From Botryllus schlosseri (taxonomy: Eukaryota): 64,000 bases of DNA. Shown here in pieces: positions 34,940 to 49,300 of the stretch. A program made the position numbers and the translations under genes. Below the pieces are notes generated by a model. The model made no database searches. It was given only the letters and a program-made list of their open reading frames with translations, and was not told the DNA's origin. Numbering within the stretch: the first letter of the stretch is position 1; each line of letters starts with the position of its first letter. Where the stretch lies: assembly GCA_051294905.1 (NCBI GenBank), contig CM119386.1, positions 11,098,001-11,162,000 of the forward strand, in the 5' to 3' direction.

Positions 34940-37900
34940 ATGAATATGGATACAAAACAACACACCGCCGAAGAGGACGACTTTCTCGCTAAAGGCAACA
35001 TCAGAGACAGTTTTCAGGAATATGAAGAAACTGTAGCTTTGATAGAAAACTTACCGAAAGCATACCGCACACAGACAAGCTCCGAATTATCTGACGAGAA
35101 ATTCATCAGCATACTTGACAAATATCAAGAGCAACCACATTTATTGGACCCACATTTAGAAGACCTACTGAGAAGACTGATGAAATATGTACGGAAGGAG
35201 GATTCATCAAAGTTATTGCTGCACGCTTTCCGATATATGTACCTCATAACGAAAGTCCGAGGGCACAAAGTCATCGTAAGACTGTTCCCACATGAAGTCG
35301 CAGATTTGGAACCCATTATGACAATGTTAGCCAAGCAAGATCCGCATGACCGAGGATCGTGGGAAGTTAAGTACATGCTGTTACTGTGGCTGTCTATGAT
35401 ATGTCTGATTCCGTTTGATATGAAAAGATTTGATAGTTCAAAGAACGAACCGTTGATGGAGAGGATTATAAAAATCGGCAAACTATACCTTACCTTGAAT
35501 ACAGACAACTGTCAAGATGCTGCAGCTTTGGTGCTTGCTAAACTGTTGACCAGGCCCGATGCGCAAGGCGTTCATTTGCCTGCCTTCCTGGACTGGTGTG
35601 TGGAACAAATCAAAGAAGGGGTCCTTGATAAAGTCGCACTGTTGCGTGGCCCGCTTTTGGCACTTGTTGCAATATTCTCCATCGGAAAACGTAGCAACAC
35701 TGTGAGTTATGCTCCTACCATTCTTGAATGCCTGGAGAAGCATGATATTTTCAACAACACTCATTCCAATATGAGGAAATTGGCCGTTAAACTTGTTCAA
35801 AGAATAGGCACTACTTTGTTGAAGCCTATTTTGCCAAAATGGAGATATCATAGAGGATCGAGGTCTTTGAAAGACACCTTGAGTGGTCAGAATTTGAAAT
35901 CAAATGATGAGAAGATGGAGCCTGAAAAAGACGAGGAGGATGAATATGACATCCCTGACGAAATTGAATCAGTCATTGAACATCTTTTAAAAGCTTTATA
36001 CGATTCTGACACCATCGTCCGTTGGTCTGCTGCGAAAGGAATCGGCCGAGTCACTGGGCGTTTACCTCGTGAGCTTGCGGACGAAGTGGTGGGCTCTGTC
36101 ATCGATTGCTTTTCACAGCTTCAGTCTGACGGTGCGTACCATGGCGGATGTCTGACATTAGCAGAACTGGGGAGACGTGGGTTGCTATTACCAGAGAGAC
36201 TTGGTGAAGTAGTTCCGTTATTACTGCGATCGTTGGTTTTCGATGTAAAACGTGGGGCTTTCAGTGTTGGGGCTAATGTTCGTGACTCCGCCTGCTATTT
36301 GGCATGGTCGTTCGCACGTGCGTACGCGTCGGAAGCCATTGCTCCTTTTGTGGATAAGATCGCAGGATCGCTGCTTATCGTTACGGCGTTCGATAGAGAA
36401 GTGAATTGCCGCAGGGCCGCGTCTGCCGCGTTTCAAGAAAATGTTGGCAGACAGGGTCAATTTCCACACGGAATCGACATTCTGACAAAAGCAGACTATT
36501 TTGCTGTCGGCAACCGATCTGACGCGTATTTGGTGATAGCTCCTTATATCGCTTCGTACAAAGAATATACGAAATCCTTCATAGACCATCTGTGTGATCG
36601 CAAGATCGACCATTGGGATATAGACATACAGTGGCTCGCTGCCAAATCTCTCGCAAAGCTAACGCCGCTGAGTCCGTTGTATATGTCTACGGAAGTGTTG
36701 GAAAAGTTGTTACCCATGTGTACAGGAATTGACTTGGTAGGACGCCATGGTAGTATTATCGCTGTCGCTGAGATTATGCATGCACTTTTTGAAGTGGAAA
36801 CAGAAAAGGCGATTGTGGGTTTGATATCAAAGAATAAACATCTAAAGACGATTTACAATATCGTGAAAGTCGCGAGTGATGCGAAACTGTTCCGCGGTTA
36901 CGGTAACGAGCTGATGCGGTTGGCGTGTTGTCATTTAATCACCCGTGCGTCTCAATGCCGCGATTTGATCGCCCCGCCTCCCAGAACCACCGAAAGCTGG
37001 CTGGACATCATCCACGACACGCTTTCCAATCTGCATTTGTTTACAGAGGTTGAAAAAATGTGCGATTCTGCTGTCAATGCGCTGTCGGAGGTGAACCATA
37101 TTACGATACCCGATTTCACTGAAGTAGCCGTAAATAAGGATTCAGCCGGCGACGCTGGAAAGGTGCTGGATCAATATTTATCCAAGCTCAAAAGCTCATC
37201 GGAAAAAGAGAGAGTCGGATATTCCCAAGCAATATCAGCTCTGCCGAGGCATGTACTTCGAGGTAACTACAAAAAAGTTCTGTATACTCTAATGAGAGCT
37301 ACGAAGCCGTACGGCAATGAAACCTCGGCGTTTGCAGAAGCTCATATGCAAGCCGTGCAGGCGTTAGTGAAGATATCTCAATGCATGGAGATTGATGTGA
37401 CGGGCGACCCGGACACATACCTATGCCAGGAAACCCTTAACGATATTTTTGACACCCTTGTAGAGAGCTTGTCGGACTATACGAAAGATTCAAGAGGCGA
37501 CGTAGGATCGATGGTTAGACTTGAGGGTATCAAAGGTATCCGAGCTTTGACAAGTAACCTTGTCAAAAAGCAGTCTGCCATACTGGACGAAGAGATGGTT
37601 ACAAAAATAATGTGCTGTCTCCTGCAACATTCTGGTGAAAAAATACACCGTGTACGCGACGGCGCCAGAGACGCGGTGTACTTAGTTTTGTTTCACGAGC
37701 CAGAAATACCGCACATACCACACCGCGAGGAGTTGCGGCAAATATTTCACAGCGCGACACGTCAACCTGGTATGAAAGACCTTTTCGAAATGACCTCACG
37801 GGTGCTGGCATTCGACGTTTATTTGTACAATATGCTATTGGGACTTGTGGTGTCTGTGGGCGATTTAACGTTGTCGCTAGCTGCTGCAAGTGGTGAGGCT

Positions 37901-38497
37901 CTCTGTGCATATGTCGACAGAATACATAAGCAAGAGCAGCCATTGTTAAAGTTCATGAATACCTTGATTAAGATATTTGAGAATTACCAGAAAGTCACAA
38001 GAGTGTCTCTTCCGTTGCTGAAGACGATTCAATTACTCCTACAGCGAGGTTACTTCACCGGAATCTCTGAAATCATGGAGGACCCGTCGAAATCGGACTC
38101 GCCGATTAATAGCGTTCCCGATCGAATTTTCGCGCTCGTTAAAAACGAGATTGCGCGCACCAAAGACGCACAGAAGATACTGATTGGGCTGGAAGTGTTC
38201 TGTAATTTCTTTCAATTTCCTTCGCCGGAACTGCGTAAGCGCACCATGAGCCGGTTAGTGTGCATGCTGGGCCATCAGTTTCCAAAAGTTCGAAGGTCGA
38301 CCGCGACACAACTCTACGAAGCAGTGTTGACGTACGAAGACTTGGTGCCCGATTGTGAAAATCTCGATACGGTTATCGTGCTTCTCAGTGAGAATGAGTG
38401 GGACGGGCCAATTCAAACTGTGAGGCCAATCAGGAATGAGCTATGCCGGTATTTTGATGTTCCAATTCCAAAATCAATTGCTAAGAAGCCAGAATAA
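34940..38497 (+). CDS. TBCD: Tubulin-specific chaperone D (1185 aa, CDS without introns)
   Basis: Conserved TBCD motifs: [147 protein letters not shown]. One uninterrupted ORF. Confidence 0.97.
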   Translation: [1185 protein letters not shown]

Positions 38498-40353: not shown

Positions 40354-43300
40354 TCACTTTTTGTGTAAGGAGCGCGCGCTTACCATTCCCCCATCGTCAG
40401 GCCTTCGCATGTTGCTGGCGCCCGCGAGTCCAGACTGCATATGATGGTGTTGCTGTGAATTACATGAAAATGAAGACCAAAAATACACATTTTATTGCTC
40501 GGCACAACTGTACCAGGGTCGTCATTGTGCGAATCATTTCACACTGAGATGAGCCAAAATAAATTCTGATTTTGTCAATAAAAGGCATGACCAGCACACA
40601 GTTAAACCGAAAAATCAAATATAATCGCTAGCAGAACATATTCAAGTTATGGCAATATCATATGCAGGGTGTTCGACTCGTGCAAGTCACAATGCTGGAC
40701 TATTCCACCCAGTTGCTATGCCGATTTCACTAGAGAAAATCAATGGAAACATTTACCCAAAACTGCATTAGCCTCGCCCAAAATAACAGCCAAGAAGAAG
40801 TGATCTTAATATAGCCTAAAAACACTGCTACTTGAAAAAGTTCAAAGAAATCTATTTGAGTATTTAAAAAAAGTAGAAGTGCTTCATTACCGACCACCTC
40901 TGGCGAATACCCGGCGACAAAGTAAAACACACACGGTCGCTTTCGGGCATATCTCGCAGCAAAGGCACCGCAGCATAACACACACACACACACACACACT
41001 GTACTCACCAATCTGGGAATGCCGTCCGGCGTCATAGTAGCAGCGGCGCCTCGGTGCAAACGACTGCTCACGTGCCTCTCTCTTTCCGCTCGCGACATGG
41101 GCCTCGACGAGGATGATGCTGCGAATAAGATACGTACTCCGTCAGACAATACGTAACTCGGGAGAATTTTAGACAGACACCGATCATCTTGCGTTTCTCT
41201 TTCTTCTCCTTTACATTCCAACACCGCACAAGTCCAATTCGCTGCTGCTAGCGATAAAGCTCTACACGTATCTACGAGCGTGACACAGACACAGTTTGAT
41301 TTCATTTATTTAAATAAATCTCTCGCAATCGGCAGAGGCAAAACAGTCATATCGCTTACGTTTACACTAGATTTAAACATTTCATTTACGGAACAAAAAA
41401 GTGCATTAACTACTTATAGAACGGACATATTCCCGGACAGTGTACGGGACTTGGTGTGGCTTTGCAGACACGAATGGCGTCGCATAGAACCTGCGAGTGT
41501 TCGCGTTTGGAGACGGAGACCGAGTTTTCCTTGCGATACGATCCTTCGCGAGTTGCAAGGCGTCAGGTCCGCCGTGCGTAAGAGCACGATCCTTGGCACC
41601 GTAGCCACCAGAGTCGCCGACGTACGCGGTTTTCCGCGCCCATCTCACGTCACCTTGATGCTTCTTGAACAGTATGGAACGGATTATCGCTTCTTTCTCA
41701 GACGGCGGTATGTCATCCCCATTTTTCGTCGGTGGCGCTTTAGCCACGTCGCTTACACGCTCTTCAGCCACGTGCTTTCTAGCCAAGTCCTCTCGGCTTT
41801 TACGGCTTTCGGCCCGACTCTTGCTTCTAGACCTGGACACATGGACTATAGTTGCGTTTTTGTCTTCAGCCGCATTTCTTCGTTCATGCGACAGCCATTT
41901 TAGTGTTCTCTTCTGCATTTTGAGTCCTACAGGAGTGGCCTTACCTTTAGGCCATGCGTCCGCATAGTAGATGACGCCTTTGGCGTCAGCGTCCCCAGCC
42001 GATGTGGTCCTCGGCATTTCCGGCTTAGACTCACGTTCAGATATCGGCCTGGCGCTTTTAGGCTTCGTCCGCGTGGCAGGCTCTATTTTCCTCGTGTCAA
42101 CTTGACACTCCTTTTTCTCTTTATCATCTCTAGACGGTGATCGCGATCGGCTACTAGTGGATTTCCGAGATTTTCGGCCACTGTTCACGCTCGGCGATCT
42201 CTTAGACCGGTCCCCGGCTTTGGGGCGTCGGCTGAGGTGGCTCGGCGGCGGCGCACGGGGCGCGTTCGAATCGTACAGCTTCAAATAACCCCGAAAAACT
42301 TTTGCAAATTCTTTGCTAGACAGCACCGCGTTGTTGTCTTTCGATGGGTGATGTCTGCCATCAACAGGGTCGAAGAAATTAGCGACACGCACGATAGAGT
42401 AAGGTAAATTACGAGGGTCGTCACACCCTGGCGACACACTTTTCAGAGTGAGCATCTCTCGTGAGCTTAACGCTGTCCGGCTACGTTTGCTGCAGTCTGA
42501 GGGCGCCACCTTTTGCTTGAAAACCACTGAGGATCGGCGGTCGGTGCCTCGTGCACCTTGGAAGGATATTTCTCTATCGTTAGCGGCAGATTTTCGACGC
42601 TGCGCTAGTTTCCAGTTGCTGACGTGATGGCGTTCGCCGTCGGCGGCTGTTTTCGGCCTTTGATTTTTCTGCCTGGTCATATCGCTTTCGCTTTTTGCCG
42701 CGACTGTCCTCTGCTGGCTCCGTTTTTTCTTGCTCTGCGGGTCTGGCAATAATACGCACGTCAACCAAAAGCACACTTTCAATACTGACGTACGTCTGCT
42801 TATATCTATCTACTAATCTACCTACAAACTACCTTTTTCTGTGGACTCCAGCGACGATTTACATCTGGCTCTGGCGGCGTGCGGCTCGCTCTGCTTGGGC
42901 TCGTATCTAGTTTTCGAAGAGGTCTAAAAGTAGCGTTCTGCGTTCACACATATCTCATAGTTTGGCGCTACATACCCTGCCTACAGTGCACACTATGCCA
43001 TGAAATCTAAAAGTACATTCTAGATAAATCGCCTAGATGACATATGGACAATTGGACATTGCCTACCGACAAATGCTACTTTCGCTCTTGTTGTTTGTCC
43101 TTTTATGATATCTACTATTACTTTTCATTCACGCATGCCTTTTATTTACATGCCCTAGGTCAGTGGTTCTTAACCAGGGTTCACTGTCTCGAGGGTTCGC
43201 CAGAGGTCAAGCCACAGACCCGACTCATACAGTGGCAGGCCCACTGATCTCCAGCATTTATTCATTGTTGTCTGTTTCATGTGAAATCGTGTCTGGTGTT

Positions 43301-46300
43301 GTTCTTTTAACACTGGCATTGATACACAGCTCATTTTGTGCACCGGTAATATTTAGTAATGTATTAGATGTGCGATGTGGTGGACTTTTGGTTTTGCGAC
43401 TAGGAGAAAATTAGAAGTTCGCTGAAGGCTTGCAAATTAGGGTAAGGGTTTGCCAGGTTAGTAAAGGTTATGAATCACTGCTCTAGGCCAAGGTGGGCGT
43501 CTGATTAAACACTACTATTGCTCTAGGCCAAGGTGGGCGTCTGATTAAACACTACTATAAGTCCTTTGGACACTCTCTTATCTTCTCATTATCGCTATCT
43601 TGTGGGGTTTTTGAATCGACATAAACATTAAATACTGACTGACTGTTTGGCGATGTAAATGAATGTGAGTCAAAGAGCTCTCGACTGAATTAATCTGACC
43701 TCGAATGTCGAATCCCTCACTACATTTACTTTTTTCTTCCCGATCTGATCCAACGTCGACTTCGACACAATGTAGTTGACCAAACCGCCGTGATCCGGAG
43801 CCCATCTCGTTTTGGCGATGCCGTGGCTTCGCGAAAACAACAGAGTGCCTTTGCTCTCGCCTGCCTTCACGTAGCCTCGATTCTTGTTGCCTTTACCGAA
43901 GTATACACGGTTGGCGTTTCTATGCCTGTCTGCGTCACTCCTGCCATCTGACACTACAGTGTTGTGTATCGATTCCATGCTGCCGACAGAGGCGCAGTCT
44001 TTAAGCAGCCAGTTCAAGGCCTTGGTCTTGCAGCGTAGCTCGTATTCTGTGGTGATCTGTCTCATGAGCGGATGGCAGGTGAGCTGCAGGCTGGCTAGGG
44101 CGTGCGAAGTTTTCTCGTTCCCCTGTCCGACATCATTGTGTTTCGATGATTTTTCTTTCAGCGAAGTCCGGCTTGTACGCTTCGCTGGATGAGACAGAGA
44201 CAAGCATAGTATCAAGAGAGAGAGAGGGAGAGAGAGCAAAATGATAATCGCTTATTTAGCACACATGACATTGTGTAGGAAACCCAACATGAAATCGGTA
44301 AAACTATAGATAACTAACCTACGGATAGATACGCAACACCCGTCGTCACGCTTGCTTGCCCGGCAGAAATTACTGCTCAGCAATCTGAACGCAACATAAT
44401 TGCTAATCCCATAGCGGACGACCCGCGTGCTAAAATTCAATGAAGTTGATCTTATTTGAAAGCTACTGTCACACTGATTCCGAAAATATACATTACAATC
44501 TAATCAGGGCAATGGAACCCCCTTAAAATACACCTCAGAGTCTGAAAATCGGCATTGTTTTGAACAATCGCAACCATGCAAGTGCCATTGTTATGGGCAT
44601 TGGGATGCGTCGCTGCGATTGCTTAGAACAATGCCGATTTTCAGACTTTGAGGTGTATTTCAAGGGGGTCCCATTGCCCTGATTAGATTGTAATGTATAT
44701 TTTCGGAATCAGTGCGACAGTAGCTTTCAAATGAGATCAATTTTATCGTATTTAAGCACGCGGGTCGTCATCAATGGGATTAGCAATTATGCTGCCTTCA
44801 GATTGCTGAGCAGAAATTTCCTGCGGGCAAGCAAGCGTGACGACGGGTGTTGCGTATCTTTCTGTAGGTTAGTTATCTATAGTAAAACGGACATCTGTTC
44901 CGAAACGATCTCAGACGTCAATTTGGTCTACAGACAGTATTGATTTTTGCTGGCGAATATTACTTTCTATGTGCCTTCATTTCGGCGTGCAGGCAAAAGG
45001 ATTGCGGGATAGGCAACTAAAACGATTTTGCAAATCTAGTTTACCACCGACATTCACTTGCACGAGTCCAAGACACACAACACGTACAGTAGTGATACAG
45101 AACATATAGAGACATTTCAAAGACAATGAACACACCAATATCGACAGACGAGAGACGTTGAATACTGATACCATAACAACAACGGCAGAAATTCACAATC
45201 GGCTATGTACGCCATCGATAGCATTTCCTACAAGATATTATTGAATAATATATTCACATTGAAATAAACCAAATATTTTCGGCTGACACACGTCAGGGTC
45301 ATCGTCACCAATTAGTAGACCATTACCCCTTGACGAGTGCCAGCCGAAAATATTCGGGTTTATTTCAAAATGAATTTATATCATTCAATTGTATATCTGC
45401 ACATTCAAGAGTCTCAACAAGACATTATCGTGTCTAGCATCATGACATTATTCAAACGTGTGAAACTAGAAATCAGCGGTGCCATGCAAATAGAGAGTAA
45501 TGAAACAAATTAAGAAAACCAACATCAATTAAAGGGATTTTCCATGTGTGTGAAGAAACGTCACTACATTCAGACAGAATTCTATGGCATTTTTAGAATT
45601 TATCACTAGATCCACACCGAAGTAATAAATGATAAACATCTAATCAGTAACCTCCGACCTCTAAATTGAAATCAATAAGATGTGATTATCAATGGAAAAT
45701 TACTAAGCAGAAAGTGACGAACCACCTTCCAAGAAAACTCGTGTGGTTTCCAGTGTACACAGAAGGCTATTTATGATACTGTAATGGCTTGTGTTATTAT
45801 GTTTCAATACCATAAGATAATGTCTCAATGGGAGCAGTTTGTTTCCAACAAAGGAAAACACATCAAAAAGGGACTGCCTTGTTTACATAAAGGATCTGAA
45901 ATCACAACAAACGTTATAATTGTATTGTGTGAGGGTTGGATACATTTAAATGGACCGGGCCAAGGGAATTCGGCGTCATGACATCATATATTTAGCCACA
46001 TAACAAGTTTGTCGGAATCTCAAATTTCACAGGCATTCCATTCTTGTGAAGGTTTTCAGGGTGGAGAAACATGTCAAACTTGTATTCCTTTACATACCAA
46101 CATTACAATCAAACACCAGTCAAAGGGCAATTATTATGAAATAGTGTAACAAACCTATACCAATGAGGCTTGTTGCATCGGGATTTGAAAATATAGGAGG
46201 AAAGCAGTTCCTTTTTGCCATCACCATCAACATGCTTGGACAATTGGGATGCCGAGTGCCTATAGCGGGGAAGCCAACGAGTTTCTGGTCTAACCCTGGA

Positions 46301-49300
46301 CTGAAGCTTGACGTAGTACCACTATGGTAGGCCTACTTGGAACTTGGAAAGATTGCAACATGAGTATTGCTTTCCTAGACAACTCCAAGTCCTTTAGAGC
46401 CAAAGAGGCGCAAAGCTTGAATATGAATCATAGTTCACCAGAAAAACAGGAAGGGTTTAAAAAATTTCAGATGTTCTCGCCAAATCTTTATGAACAGAAG
46501 TGCAAAAATAACACTGAGTAAGTATTGCCAGTAAAATGACGATATGTAGTGTTAAGCTATGTTCAATTGTTCATGAGCAAGGCACACACAGCTGACTTAT
46601 AGACATTTTTAATGCAAAATGTCAACAGAAATGGTAAAATCGTAGTCGGACACACAACGGAACCCAGAGAGATTGATTTGTTGATCGCCGCAAAACAATA
46701 ATCGAATGTATCAACAACATGTATCGACACAGAATTGCACGAGAGCACTCCGCAACTTTCCACCATTGGGTAAACAATATTTCAAATGTATGTCCGTTAC
46801 TGTGTTTGCTCGTAGCGCAGTTGGTATAAGATAGCGTTGTAGGAAAACGATCGATAATACCGTTGACAGAAATACACGTGTAACAATGCGGCTACCACAA
46901 ACAGAGGCACAAAGACAAGCACATACTACATTGATAACGTAACCAATTCTTCTAAACGACATACACCTTCAACGGAGACGCATAGCTCATAAGATCCTAC
47001 ACTCTCAATGGTATCGGCTATCTACCACTGAAAACTGTCACACAGTCACACTATTCCTACGACACAGCAGACCGGTCTCCCTGCACAAAGTCTACATGAC
47101 TGCAGTTACCTTTTCTTGCCTTAACCTTCCGATTCTATCCTCAAAAAGGAGCTAACAAAAACATGCCTGAACTTGATTCGTGTGACCAATTTTACTAACT
47201 GTACCCCGCTGTTGCTTGACATATACGATACTATCATGTTGACGATGTCACAATATTAAATCTTACTTTGTCCGTGATGAGCAGCTGAGCTTTGCATTTG
47301 GCGAATGCCCGTGGCGGCAGTGCCGCCGAGCGCGCGGTTCGTGGATGAACGAGTATGCTGGGTTCGATCTTCCCGGTCCTTCCTATCTTTGTCTTGCCCG
47401 TCGGCGTTATTCCGGCTACTCTGTAACACAAACGCATGTGTAACAGACTTACGTTGTTGAATACCGAAGATATAATTCCGTGCACACGAGATAACCCGTT
47501 TAGAAATTACATCTTTGCGATGTAAATCAAAAACAAACAAGAGGTAGACAGCATAGTGCAACAGTAAAGATAGGCCTACGCAGTAGACAGATGACAGAGG
47601 AGTGGTAATAGATTTAAAATCCAAAATTCCAATCAATGGAAGGCTCAGAAAAATACCAGAGATGGTCAGGGTAGTCACTGCTGATGTAAAGCCGTAAATT
47701 TCTGCTCCATTAAAAGTAGAAGTATCTATTACAACGACATGTTTAACTAATTAAAGTAGAAGTAGGAAATGAAGATATGAAAATTATTCGAGTTAGTAGT
47801 TTCATAAAGTAGATTTGGTTGATCTGTCGCATACTTTAAGAAGATAATCGGAAACGGCCACTTTCCAAATTCAAAAGAGCATTCTCACGTCTGACTCAAA
47901 ACAATCGTTGACAATACCATAAATAGGTGCCAATGCACTGTTCGAAGATATTATACAGTTACCGTGATAAAGGGTCTCGTTCGCTTAGTTGTCATGATAA
48001 TTTCACTCATGAAAATGCCACAAGCACCTACTTTAAAAATCCAAGGTTAGAGAAATGAGTGGTTTTGCCTACAAAACTGCAAAGCAAGTTCGTAGCACTA
48101 GTAAACAAATCCCACTTGGGTACTCAAACCGACCAGTGACAAGTGACCACCTCTGGACAGGACATTATCGAAAATGTAGTAGGCCTACCGTACATGAATG
48201 ATGCAAGTGGCGCTAACGACCAAAGCTTGAATCGGAACATTTGTCTTGCGAAAAAGAATATCAACATTTCCAGAAGTAAAATCGCCATCGGGCGTAAAGC
48301 AAGATCAAAAAGTAACGGGGCGTGTTGTCAGGTTTGTTTGTTGTGAAACTGAGCATGGTTAAACAACCATCATCCAATCCAGGCTATATCGGAAGGAAAC
48401 GAAATATGTTGTATTGTGGCAATTTAATGGAACAAGCGAGACCGGCAACAATCGAAATACCACAGGAGATTACCAAAGATAAAACCTTTGACGGCAATAC
48501 TGCAGTTGGGATTATTCCATAAGAATGCAGTTGGTCAGCACAGAAAGGTCAACGACATTCCTGAACTCAAAATTAACGGTTTCCACTTGTAAAATAATGA
48601 ATTGCACCTTTATGAAGCTGTCACAATTAGTCACTAAACATTTCCAATTACCAGTGTCGGAATTCACAAAACGGACAAGGCAAGTAATAATATAGGGCCT
48701 AGGACAGCTGTTTGGGATAGAGGCTAATTAAATGGGGTTGAAGAGAAATAAAAGATGTTATCTTAGATACGGACCAACACAATGAATACATTCTCGGATA
48801 TGACGCAATGAAAAACATATTCATCTCATTGTATCAAGCACCCCCTCACGAAAAAGAAATGTCACGTTCAAAACATAATGGTCCTCAAGCCGCCAACGGA
48901 GTTGATTCCTCATTCAAATTTCTCAATGAGCGTCGGACCACGGGACGGCCGCGATTAATCATTCATGATTCCCATATAGAATTGAATTACCCAGACACAA
49001 AGGGTTGAATTAATCTTTGTTGAAATCGACAAAAAAAGCTGCTCAAGTATCCGCCTCGTGAGCATGTCACAATGGCGACCTACACTTTAATTTCAAGCAC
49101 ATACAAATGAAGCAATGTTTTTGTAGCATCTACGATAACTGATATCAGCCTATTATTCATACGCGGTTTGGGTGAGATTCAGGGTCCAAAAGACACAAAT
49201 TACTTCAACTAGACATAGTAATCATCCTGACAAGAATGAGATTGTCAATTCTCGCTCTATCTAAAGAGCTTAAAGACACACAAACATGCATTGCGGATGG

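What the first reader, a model, noticed from the sequence alone, without database searches (positions are those of the whole stretch)
41406..42742. Cryptic 444-aa Arg/Ser/Lys-rich exon that could give CK1 delta/epsilon a 791-aa isoform
Seen: the largest unexplained ORF in the window lies on the CK1 strand between exon 7 and the conserved exon 8. Its first plausible AG is in exactly the phase exon 7 needs (1039 + 1337 = 2376 nt, an open frame), and it ends with a stop and AATAAA. The peptide is basic and low-complexity ([28 protein letters not shown]). Known: the CK1 delta/epsilon tail is autoinhibitory by autophosphorylation, and small tail splice changes alter substrate preference and clock period in mammals. 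Inference: a much larger tail swap that drops the conserved RLHRGA segment and adds an RS-like, possibly nuclear-speckle- or germline-targeting domain.
Basis: partly seen in the sequence, partly recalled or inferred. Interest (0 to 1): 0.8.

Follow-up and report, generated by a model that had tools for sequence, protein, structure and literature searches.

The report
Long alternative tail of ascidian CK1
The big open reading frame inside the casein kinase 1 delta/epsilon gene of this sea squirt is a real, conserved coding exon. It is the last of three alternative exons that replace the kinase's usual short regulatory tail with a 627-residue basic tail of unknown function.

Summary
The ORF at 41406-42742 (-) is real and coding, and it belongs to CK1 delta/epsilon transcripts.

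- **Splice chain.** RNA contigs of one run show GT..AG joints: exon 7 (donor 47267) -> 7a (44184-43730, 455 nt) -> 7b (42923-42833, 91 nt) -> 7c (42742 to stop 41406). The chain is open throughout, which gives a 973-aa isoform (346 aa shared plus a 627-aa tail), not 791 aa. The direct 47267->42742 joint was not seen. The exon 7->7a joint has only a 29-nt anchor.
- **Conservation.** The three exons, their phases, a single AATAAA 76-97 nt after the stop, and the position just upstream of the RLHRGA exon are shared with contigs of other species, with coverage varying by contig. In Styela clava all of these are present, and a gene model there gives a 997-aa kinase product that ends at the 7c stop.
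- **Selection.** Synonymous sites are saturated (pS 0.86) while pN is 0.21-0.31.
- **Tail properties.** The tail has pI 10.4 and net charge +70, and gives no confident fold. It has no Pfam or PDB match, and its only relatives in about 1.8 billion proteins are these ascidian ORFs. The RS patches are not conserved, so it is not an RS domain.

Verdict: a conserved, lineage-specific tail swap by alternative terminal exons. The structure is well supported; the function is only inferred.

The parts
47267..47420 (-). CK1 delta/epsilon exon 7 (154 nt). It is the last exon shared by both isoforms. Its donor CAAA|GTAAGA is in phase 1.
   Evidence: Sequence. RNA contigs end or branch exactly at 47267. 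X1 continues into exon 8 letters; an X2 contig joins it to 44184.
43730..44184 (-). Alternative exon 7a (455 nt, 152 codons including the junction codon). It has a phase-1 acceptor (tctcatccag|CG) and a phase-0 donor (AAAAAA|GTAAAT).
   Evidence: Joints 47267->44184 and 43730->42923 in X2 contigs. Homologues are P0004 and P0005 at 64-65 % and S. clava at 37 %. It is the same 455 nt in L001. There is no in-frame ATG in the first 40 codons.
42833..42923 (-). Alternative mini-exon 7b (91 nt). It has a phase-0 acceptor (cttttag|ACC) and a phase-1 donor (AAAAAG|GTAGTT). It restores the phase that 7c needs.
   Evidence: One X2 contig of 437 nt spans 7a-7b-7c with 66, 91 and 280 nt on the three exons. 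Homologous exons of 94 nt (L001), 73 nt (L002) and 85 nt (S. clava) keep the phase and the R[CS]KS motif.
41406..42742 (-). Alternative terminal exon 7c, coding part (1337 nt including the stop TAA at 41408-41406; 444 full codons plus the junction codon).
   Evidence: ORF. Acceptor use: joint 42833->42742. RNA contig cover at depth 6-11 with no cover in the introns. Homologues: P0001 and P0002 at 51-52 %, P0003 at 25-27 % (E 1e-16), S. clava at 31 %. pN 0.32 against pS 0.87.
41305..41310 (-). AATAAA poly(A) signal of exon 7c, 96 nt after the stop. The presumed 3' end is about 41280-41295 and was not observed.
   Evidence: It is the only AATAAA or ATTAAA between the stop and exon 8. A single AATAAA sits at +76, +97 and +97 in L001, L002 and S. 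clava. RNA contigs end at about 41337-41351, so the cleavage site itself is unverified.
41009..41118 (-). Canonical CK1 exon 8 ([25 protein letters not shown]...). It has a phase-1 acceptor and is the alternative partner of the exon 7 donor.
   Evidence: Sequence. The loose end of the X1 contig at 47267 reads exon 8 letters. The same exon follows 7c in L001, L002 and L003.

Best explanation
The ORF is exon 7c, the last of three alternative 3' exons (7a, 7b, 7c) that lie inside what is intron 7 of the canonical CK1 delta/epsilon transcript.

**Shown.** The exon 7 donor at 47267 can pair with the exon 8 acceptor (41118), giving the ordinary short tail with the RLHRGA segment. It can also pair with the 7a acceptor (44184). 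In that case splicing goes 7a -> 7b -> 7c, translation stops at 41406, and the transcript is presumably cleaved after the AATAAA at 41305-41310, about 190 nt before exon 8. The product has the complete kinase domain, the first 51 tail residues (346 aa in all) and a 627-aa replacement tail, 973 aa in total. The exon chain, the open frame, its conservation and purifying selection are shown.

**Inferred.**
1. The same molecules carry exons 1-6.
2. The swap removes the distal part of the tail. In mammalian CK1 delta this part inhibits the kinase when autophosphorylated, so the long form should be regulated differently.
3. The very basic, apparently disordered tail, with its handful of conserved short hydrophobic motifs, acts as a docking or localising module. 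Candidate partners are nucleic acid, microtubules or a partner protein.

I put the structural reading at about 0.85 and the functional reading at about 0.35.
For: **RNA contigs (run X2).**
- Three GT..AG joints: 47267->44184, 43730->42923 and 42833->42742.
- One contig spans 7a-7b-7c.
- Introns have zero depth, while 7a-7c have depth 6-11 and exon 7 has 22-26.
- In X2 the exon 7 contig stops exactly at the donor, as expected at a branch in the assembly graph.
- In X1 the contig runs on into exon 8.

**Frame.**
- 1039+455+91+1337 = 2922 nt, open to the stop.
- There is no in-frame ATG in the first 40 codons of 7a, yet that stretch is open in four species, with an in-frame 15-residue gap in P0005. 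It must therefore be translated from upstream.

**Conservation.**
- L001 (a relative) has 7a (455 nt), 7b (94 nt), 7c (1400 nt) and then CK1 exon 8, with all phases kept.
- L002 has 7b, 7c and exon 8.
- S. clava has exon 7 with the same phase-1 donor, then 7a (440 nt), 7b (85 nt), 7c (1430 nt) and exon 8.
- The S. clava called gene has a 997-aa Pkinase product ending at the 7c stop. That equals (1039+440+85+1430)/3 - 1.
- A single AATAAA lies 76-97 nt after the stop in all four.

**Selection.**
- pS is 0.86, which is saturated.
- pN is 0.21 for 7a and 0.31-0.32 for 7b and 7c.
Against: - The exon 7->7a joint rests on one contig with a 29-nt anchor, below the tool's own 31-letter rule for bridging. 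It was seen in one run only.
- The two raw-read runs had no depth even on exon 7 and add nothing.
- No single molecule was seen from the kinase exons to 7c.
- The 3' end was not observed.
- An X1 contig runs 16 nt past the 7a donor, so some unspliced or read-through RNA exists.
- In L001 and P0005 an in-frame ATG lies just upstream of the 7a acceptor. A stand-alone product is therefore conceivable in those species.
- The S. clava model is an automatic annotation.
- Nothing tests the function. AlphaFold models have pLDDT 36, and Pfam, PDB and Atlas give nothing.
Confidence: 0.85

Rival explanations
1. One reading: exon 7 splices directly to 42742, skipping 7a and 7b, and gives a 791-aa isoform with a 444-aa tail.
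For: The phases fit. Exon 7 ends in phase 1 and 42742 is a phase-1 acceptor. 7a+7b = 546 nt is a multiple of three, so skipping both keeps the frame. Logan contigs drop rare variants, so a minor form is not excluded.
Against: No 47267->42742 joint is in any of the four runs. The only partner seen for 42742 is 42833. 7a and 7b are conserved, under purifying selection and phase-locked to 7c in the relatives. The S. clava model contains all three exons.
Confidence: 0.08
2. A separate nested gene: 7a-7b-7c make an independent transcript with its own start site, or a trans-spliced leader on the 7a acceptor. This would encode a stand-alone basic protein of about 590-630 aa. The exon 7 joint would be a minor chimeric by-product.
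For: The cassette has no detectable relation to CK1 tails elsewhere and looks like a captured gene. A methionine at 7a codon 41 is conserved in all four species. L001 and P0005 have an in-frame ATG just upstream of the 7a acceptor. Ascidians use spliced-leader trans-splicing (my own knowledge). The exon 7 anchor is only 29 nt.
Against: The window has no in-frame ATG upstream of the 7a acceptor or in its first 40 codons, yet those codons stay open in four species with an in-frame indel. The 7a acceptor is in phase 1 in all of them, matching the exon 7 donor. The X2 contig runs from 7a into exon 7 without a break at 44184, and no loose end was listed there. The S. clava model fuses it to the kinase.
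Confidence: 0.1
3. Not a gene part at all: a chance ORF, a transposon remnant or a decaying retrogene inside the intron.
For: Low-complexity basic composition and no Pfam family. Repeats and a foldback element lie nearby in the same intron.
Against: It is spliced in RNA. It is kept open over 440-475 codons in five species at saturated synonymous divergence. Its position, its splice phases and a poly(A) signal are conserved. Only one copy per genome locus was seen.
Confidence: 0.01

Closest known systems
Mammalian CK1 delta1/delta2 (and epsilon) C-terminal splice variants
   Same: Alternative 3' exons downstream of an unchanged kinase domain change the C-terminal tail. That tail is disordered and autoinhibits the kinase when autophosphorylated, and the variants differ in activity and in their effect on circadian period (PMC11474029).
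   Different: [quoted passage not shown] Here the whole distal tail, from the RLHRGA exon onward, is replaced by 627 residues from three exons with their own poly(A) site. No effect on activity has been measured.
Styela clava gene model next to TBCD on OZ123516.1 (GCA_964204865.2), 997-aa Pkinase product
   Same: Same gene, same neighbour (convergent TBCD) and same exon chain 7-7a-7b-7c. It ends at the 7c stop, and its length equals the sum of the exons I mapped.
   Different: It is an automatic gene call in another species. The tail is only 31-37 % identical. I found no paper that describes it. The protein did not appear in the two protein libraries searched.
CK1 family members with long non-catalytic C-terminal regions that localise the kinase (yeast Hrr25 central and P/Q-rich regions; plant CK1-like kinases whose C-terminal part binds microtubules). 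This is from my own knowledge and was not checked here.
   Same: A conserved CK1 kinase domain followed by a long, lineage-specific, non-catalytic region thought to direct localisation or partner choice.
   Different: Those regions are constitutive parts of separate genes. Here the long region is an optional alternative to a normal delta/epsilon tail in one gene. No sequence similarity was found.

Membership tests
CK1 delta/epsilon gene (host gene of the exon) | CK1 kinase-domain motifs in order on the same strand, and the delta/epsilon-type tail segment RLHRGA | tested here: met
   GSGSFG, VAIKLE, ELLGPS, HRDVKP, DFGLAK, SRRDD, KRQKYE, DDKPDY, FDWN and RLHRG were found in order on the minus strand from 56891 to 41062. 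Exon borders have GT/AG.
Alternative last exon(s) of a gene | The same upstream donor is joined in RNA to two different acceptors | tested here: met
   47267->exon 8 (X1 loose end) and 47267->44184 (X2 contig, 29-nt anchor). The short anchor is a caveat.
Alternative last exon(s) of a gene | Own in-frame stop codon and own poly(A) signal upstream of the competing exon | tested here: met
   Stop at 41406-41408. A single AATAAA lies 96 nt later and 187 nt before exon 8, at a conserved position in four species. The cleavage site itself was not seen.
Alternative last exon(s) of a gene | One molecule carries both the upstream constitutive exons and the alternative exon | not testable with these tools
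The S. clava 997-aa model is indirect support.
RS domain (SR-protein-like, speckle targeting) | A long run dominated by RS/SR dipeptides | tested here: not met
   At most 9 RS/SR dipeptides in any 50 residues and 28 in 627 residues.
RS domain (SR-protein-like, speckle targeting) | The RS run is conserved in orthologues | tested here: not met
   The SRSRSPSR and SRSRSKSR patches align to non-RS sequence or to gaps in P0003 and S. clava. Only the general basic, Ser-rich composition persists.
Independent nested gene | Own start codon at the head of the conserved coding sequence | tested here: not met
   There is no in-frame ATG upstream of the 7a acceptor or in the first 40 codons of 7a in the window. 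That stretch is nevertheless open in four species.
Independent nested gene | Own transcription start or spliced leader at its first exon | tested here: inconclusive
   No loose end was listed at 44184 and the contig continues into exon 7. Contigs drop rare forms, and six loose ends were not shown.
PP1-docking (RVxF) or CK1-docking (FxxxF) short motifs | Motif present and conserved in orthologues | tested here: not met
   RVYF/RVFF in 7a and FAKVF in 7c occur in the window and its two close relatives. They are lost in S. clava (YVSY) and in P0003 and S. clava.

The most novel reading that the evidence does not exclude
A formerly independent gene that sat in a CK1 intron was captured as alternative terminal exons in stolidobranch ascidians. 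This created a second, abundant form of the single CK1 delta/epsilon kinase. That form lacks the distal, autoinhibitory part of the tail and is permanently tethered, through a 627-aa basic disordered module, to a particular structure or partner. It would be a natural experiment in rewiring CK1 regulation and targeting, and a fusion clue to a CK1 partner.
Probability: 0.25. Interest if true: 0.6.

Novelty: new variant of a known kind. Interest (0 to 1): 0.45.

Why it matters
CK1 delta/epsilon is controlled largely through its short disordered tail. In mammals a 16-residue splice difference already changes kinase activity and clock period (PMC11474029). Here a chordate relative swaps the whole distal tail for a 627-residue, strongly basic, lineage-specific one.

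- The swap is kept under purifying selection in at least five species.
- By rough contig depth, the long form is about a quarter to a half of exon 7 depth in two RNA data sets. The tool warns that this depth is a poor measure of expression.
- If the long form is made as protein, it is a natural tail-less or re-targeted CK1 in an animal where electroporation and embryo imaging are routine.
- For annotation, the CK1 gene of this genome should carry a 973-aa isoform with exons 7a, 7b and 7c, not a nested gene or a 791-aa form.
- It is not a new principle. A gene model of the same shape already exists for Styela clava.

Tried and rejected
**Function searches with no result**
- Pfam on 7a, 7c and the relatives gave nothing above noise.
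- ESM Atlas on 7a and 7c gave scores of 0.70-0.76, in the range that shuffled sequences reach.
- PDB profile searches with the 7a and 7c alignments gave no hit at E<=1.
- AlphaFold2 of 7a and 7c, with 3- and 4-row alignments, gave pLDDT 36. I ran no fold search, because such models give meaningless matches.
- Profile-profile comparison of 7a with 7c showed no internal repeat.

**Searches for relatives**
- An HMMER profile of 7c against 1.84 billion representatives found only P0002 and P0003.
- A word search with 7a found only P0004 and P0005.
- I tried to widen the taxon range through TBCD synteny. In two more distant genomes CK1 is not next to TBCD, so the cassette's presence outside Stolidobranchia stays untested.

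**RNA and literature**
- The raw-read RNA runs X22 and X24 had no depth even on exon 7 and were uninformative.
- Paper searches for the SRA accessions, for ascidian CK1 isoforms and for Styela CK1 found nothing relevant.

**Readings considered and dropped**
- RS domain, PP1 RVxF docking and CK1 FxxxF docking: the motifs are not conserved.
- 7a as a terminal exon reading on to the stop at 43670: the read-through codons are not conserved in any relative.
- A 7a->7c splice without 7b: it would shift the frame.

Full report
**1.
- On the minus strand an open frame runs from 42782 to the TAA at 41408-41406.
- An AG at 42744-42743 behind a pyrimidine-rich stretch gives an exon start at 42742 in phase 1.
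- CK1 exon 7 ends at 47267 (CAAA|GTAAGA), also in phase 1.
- I rebuilt CK1 exons 1-7 from the kinase motifs and GT/AG borders.
- AATAAA lies at 41310-41305.
- GC rises to 0.52-0.545 over the ORF, against about 0.40 around it.
- The peptide is basic and Ser-rich.

**2. What RNA shows.** I had one read-laying run and used window 41340-47339 with two raw-read runs and two runs held as contigs.
- The raw-read runs had no depth even on exon 7 and are uninformative.
- The two contig runs behave as RNA. Introns have zero depth, while exon 7 has depth 22-26 and the ORF 6-11.
- Run X2 gives three joints, all GT..AG on the minus strand:
  - 47267->44184
  - 43730->42923
  - 42833->42742
- One 437-nt contig covers 66 nt of the upstream exon, a whole 91-nt exon and 280 nt of the ORF.
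- The contig covering 43730-44184 carries 29 further letters that match the end of exon 7. That length is what a k=31 assembly graph leaves at a branch point. It is below the tool's 31-letter rule, so I treat this joint as supported but not proven.
- In X2 the exon 7 contig stops exactly at the donor. In X1 it continues into exon 8 letters.
- No contig joins 47267 to 42742.

The chain is therefore exon 7 -> 7a (44184-43730, 455 nt) -> 7b (42923-42833, 91 nt) -> 7c (42742-41406). It is open from exon 7 to the stop. The total is 1039+455+91+1337 = 2922 nt, a 973-aa protein with a 627-aa alternative tail.

**3. Conservation.**
- A search with 7c found two ORFs at 49 % local identity (51-52 % in the multiple alignment). 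An HMMER profile over 1.84 billion proteins added one more at E 1e-16.
- Contig L001 is unspliced DNA-like sequence of a relative. It holds 7a (455 nt), 7b (94 nt), 7c (1400 nt) and then the CK1 RLHRGA exon, with every acceptor and donor phase as in the window.
- L002, a more distant species, holds 7b (73 nt), 7c and the RLHRGA exon.
- TBCD, the window's convergent neighbour, is 67 % identical to Styela clava and about 50 % to Ciona and Phallusia. The window therefore comes from a stolidobranch ascidian other than S. clava.
- Fetching the S. clava TBCD locus brought the CK1 3' region with it. It holds:
  - exon 7 with the same phase-1 donor;
  - 7a (440 nt), 7b (85 nt) and 7c (1430 nt);
  - exon 8.
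- The gene called there has a 997-aa product with a protein-kinase domain and ends at the 7c stop. That is exactly (1039+440+85+1430)/3 - 1.
- Between the window and L001, synonymous sites are saturated (pS 0.86). pN is 0.21 in 7a and 0.31-0.32 in 7b and 7c.
- A single AATAAA lies 76-97 nt after the stop in all four loci.

**4. Alternative tail or nested gene?**
- The window has no in-frame ATG upstream of the 7a acceptor or in the first 40 codons of 7a.
- Those codons nevertheless stay open in four species, and one species has an in-frame 15-residue gap.
- All three acceptors that can follow exon 7 (44184, 42742, 41118) are in phase 1.
- This fits translation from the kinase exons.
- What keeps the nested-gene reading alive, at about 0.1:
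  - a conserved Met at 7a codon 41;
  - an upstream ATG in two relatives;
  - the short exon 7 anchor;
  - the lack of long reads.

**5. What the tail is.**
- It is 627 aa, with pI 10.4, net charge +70, R and K at 10.8 % each and S at 12.3 %.
- No Pfam, PDB or Atlas relative was found. AlphaFold gives pLDDT 36.
- The five-species alignments show short conserved motifs embedded in variable basic sequence:
  - in 7c: VSP.C...PYS.VRVA.F, EC.V..KI.P, YADAWPK, EK..[IV]RS.LFK.H, and P..S.K near the C-terminus;
  - in 7a: HP.M..I..E..LR.K.K.L.WL..DCA and HGGLVNYI.
I reject the RS-domain reading and the two docking-motif leads.

**6. Mechanism.**
- Shown: a choice at the exon 7 donor between exon 8 and 7a, with a conserved poly(A) signal ending the long form about 190 nt before exon 8.
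- Inferred, from the mammalian work on tail autoinhibition (PMC11474029): the long form loses the distal tail and gains a docking or localising module.
- Contig depths suggest the long form is a substantial minority, roughly a quarter to a half of exon 7 depth. The tool warns that this measure is poor.

**7. Novelty.**
- Tail splice variants of CK1 delta/epsilon are known. A swap of this size is not described in the papers I could search.
- An automatic S. clava gene model already has this shape.
- I file it as a new variant of a known kind, of moderate interest.

Noticed in passing
window 34940-38497 (+) and L003 10001-13561: TBCD is a single uninterrupted ORF, convergent with CK1. The same intronless gene (1186 aa in 3561 nt) and the same TBCD-CK1 tail-to-tail arrangement occur in Styela clava. 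Two more distant genomes lack CK1 next to TBCD.
   Followed up: partly
window about 44490-44700: A perfect-looking foldback lies in the intron between exon 7 and 7a. About 44641-44700 is the reverse complement of about 44521-44580, which is MITE-like.
   Followed up: no
window 45240-45540 and 44299-44359: Short intronic stretches have very high depth in RNA contigs (up to about 400) with loose ends on both sides. They are a repeated, transcribed element rather than part of CK1.
   Followed up: no
window 43714-43729: An X1 RNA contig runs 16 nt past the 7a donor into the intron. This is either unspliced RNA or a minor read-through form ending at the stop at 43670. The read-through codons are not conserved in relatives.
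   Followed up: partly
window about 40975-41003: A (GT)n microsatellite starts directly after the exon 8 donor.
   Followed up: no
L001 164-176 and P0005 N-terminus: In two relatives an in-frame ATG (MFD...) sits 13 nt upstream of the 7a acceptor, inside the acceptor's pyrimidine tract. The window has none in frame. This could be chance, or a start for a stand-alone product in those species.
   Followed up: partly
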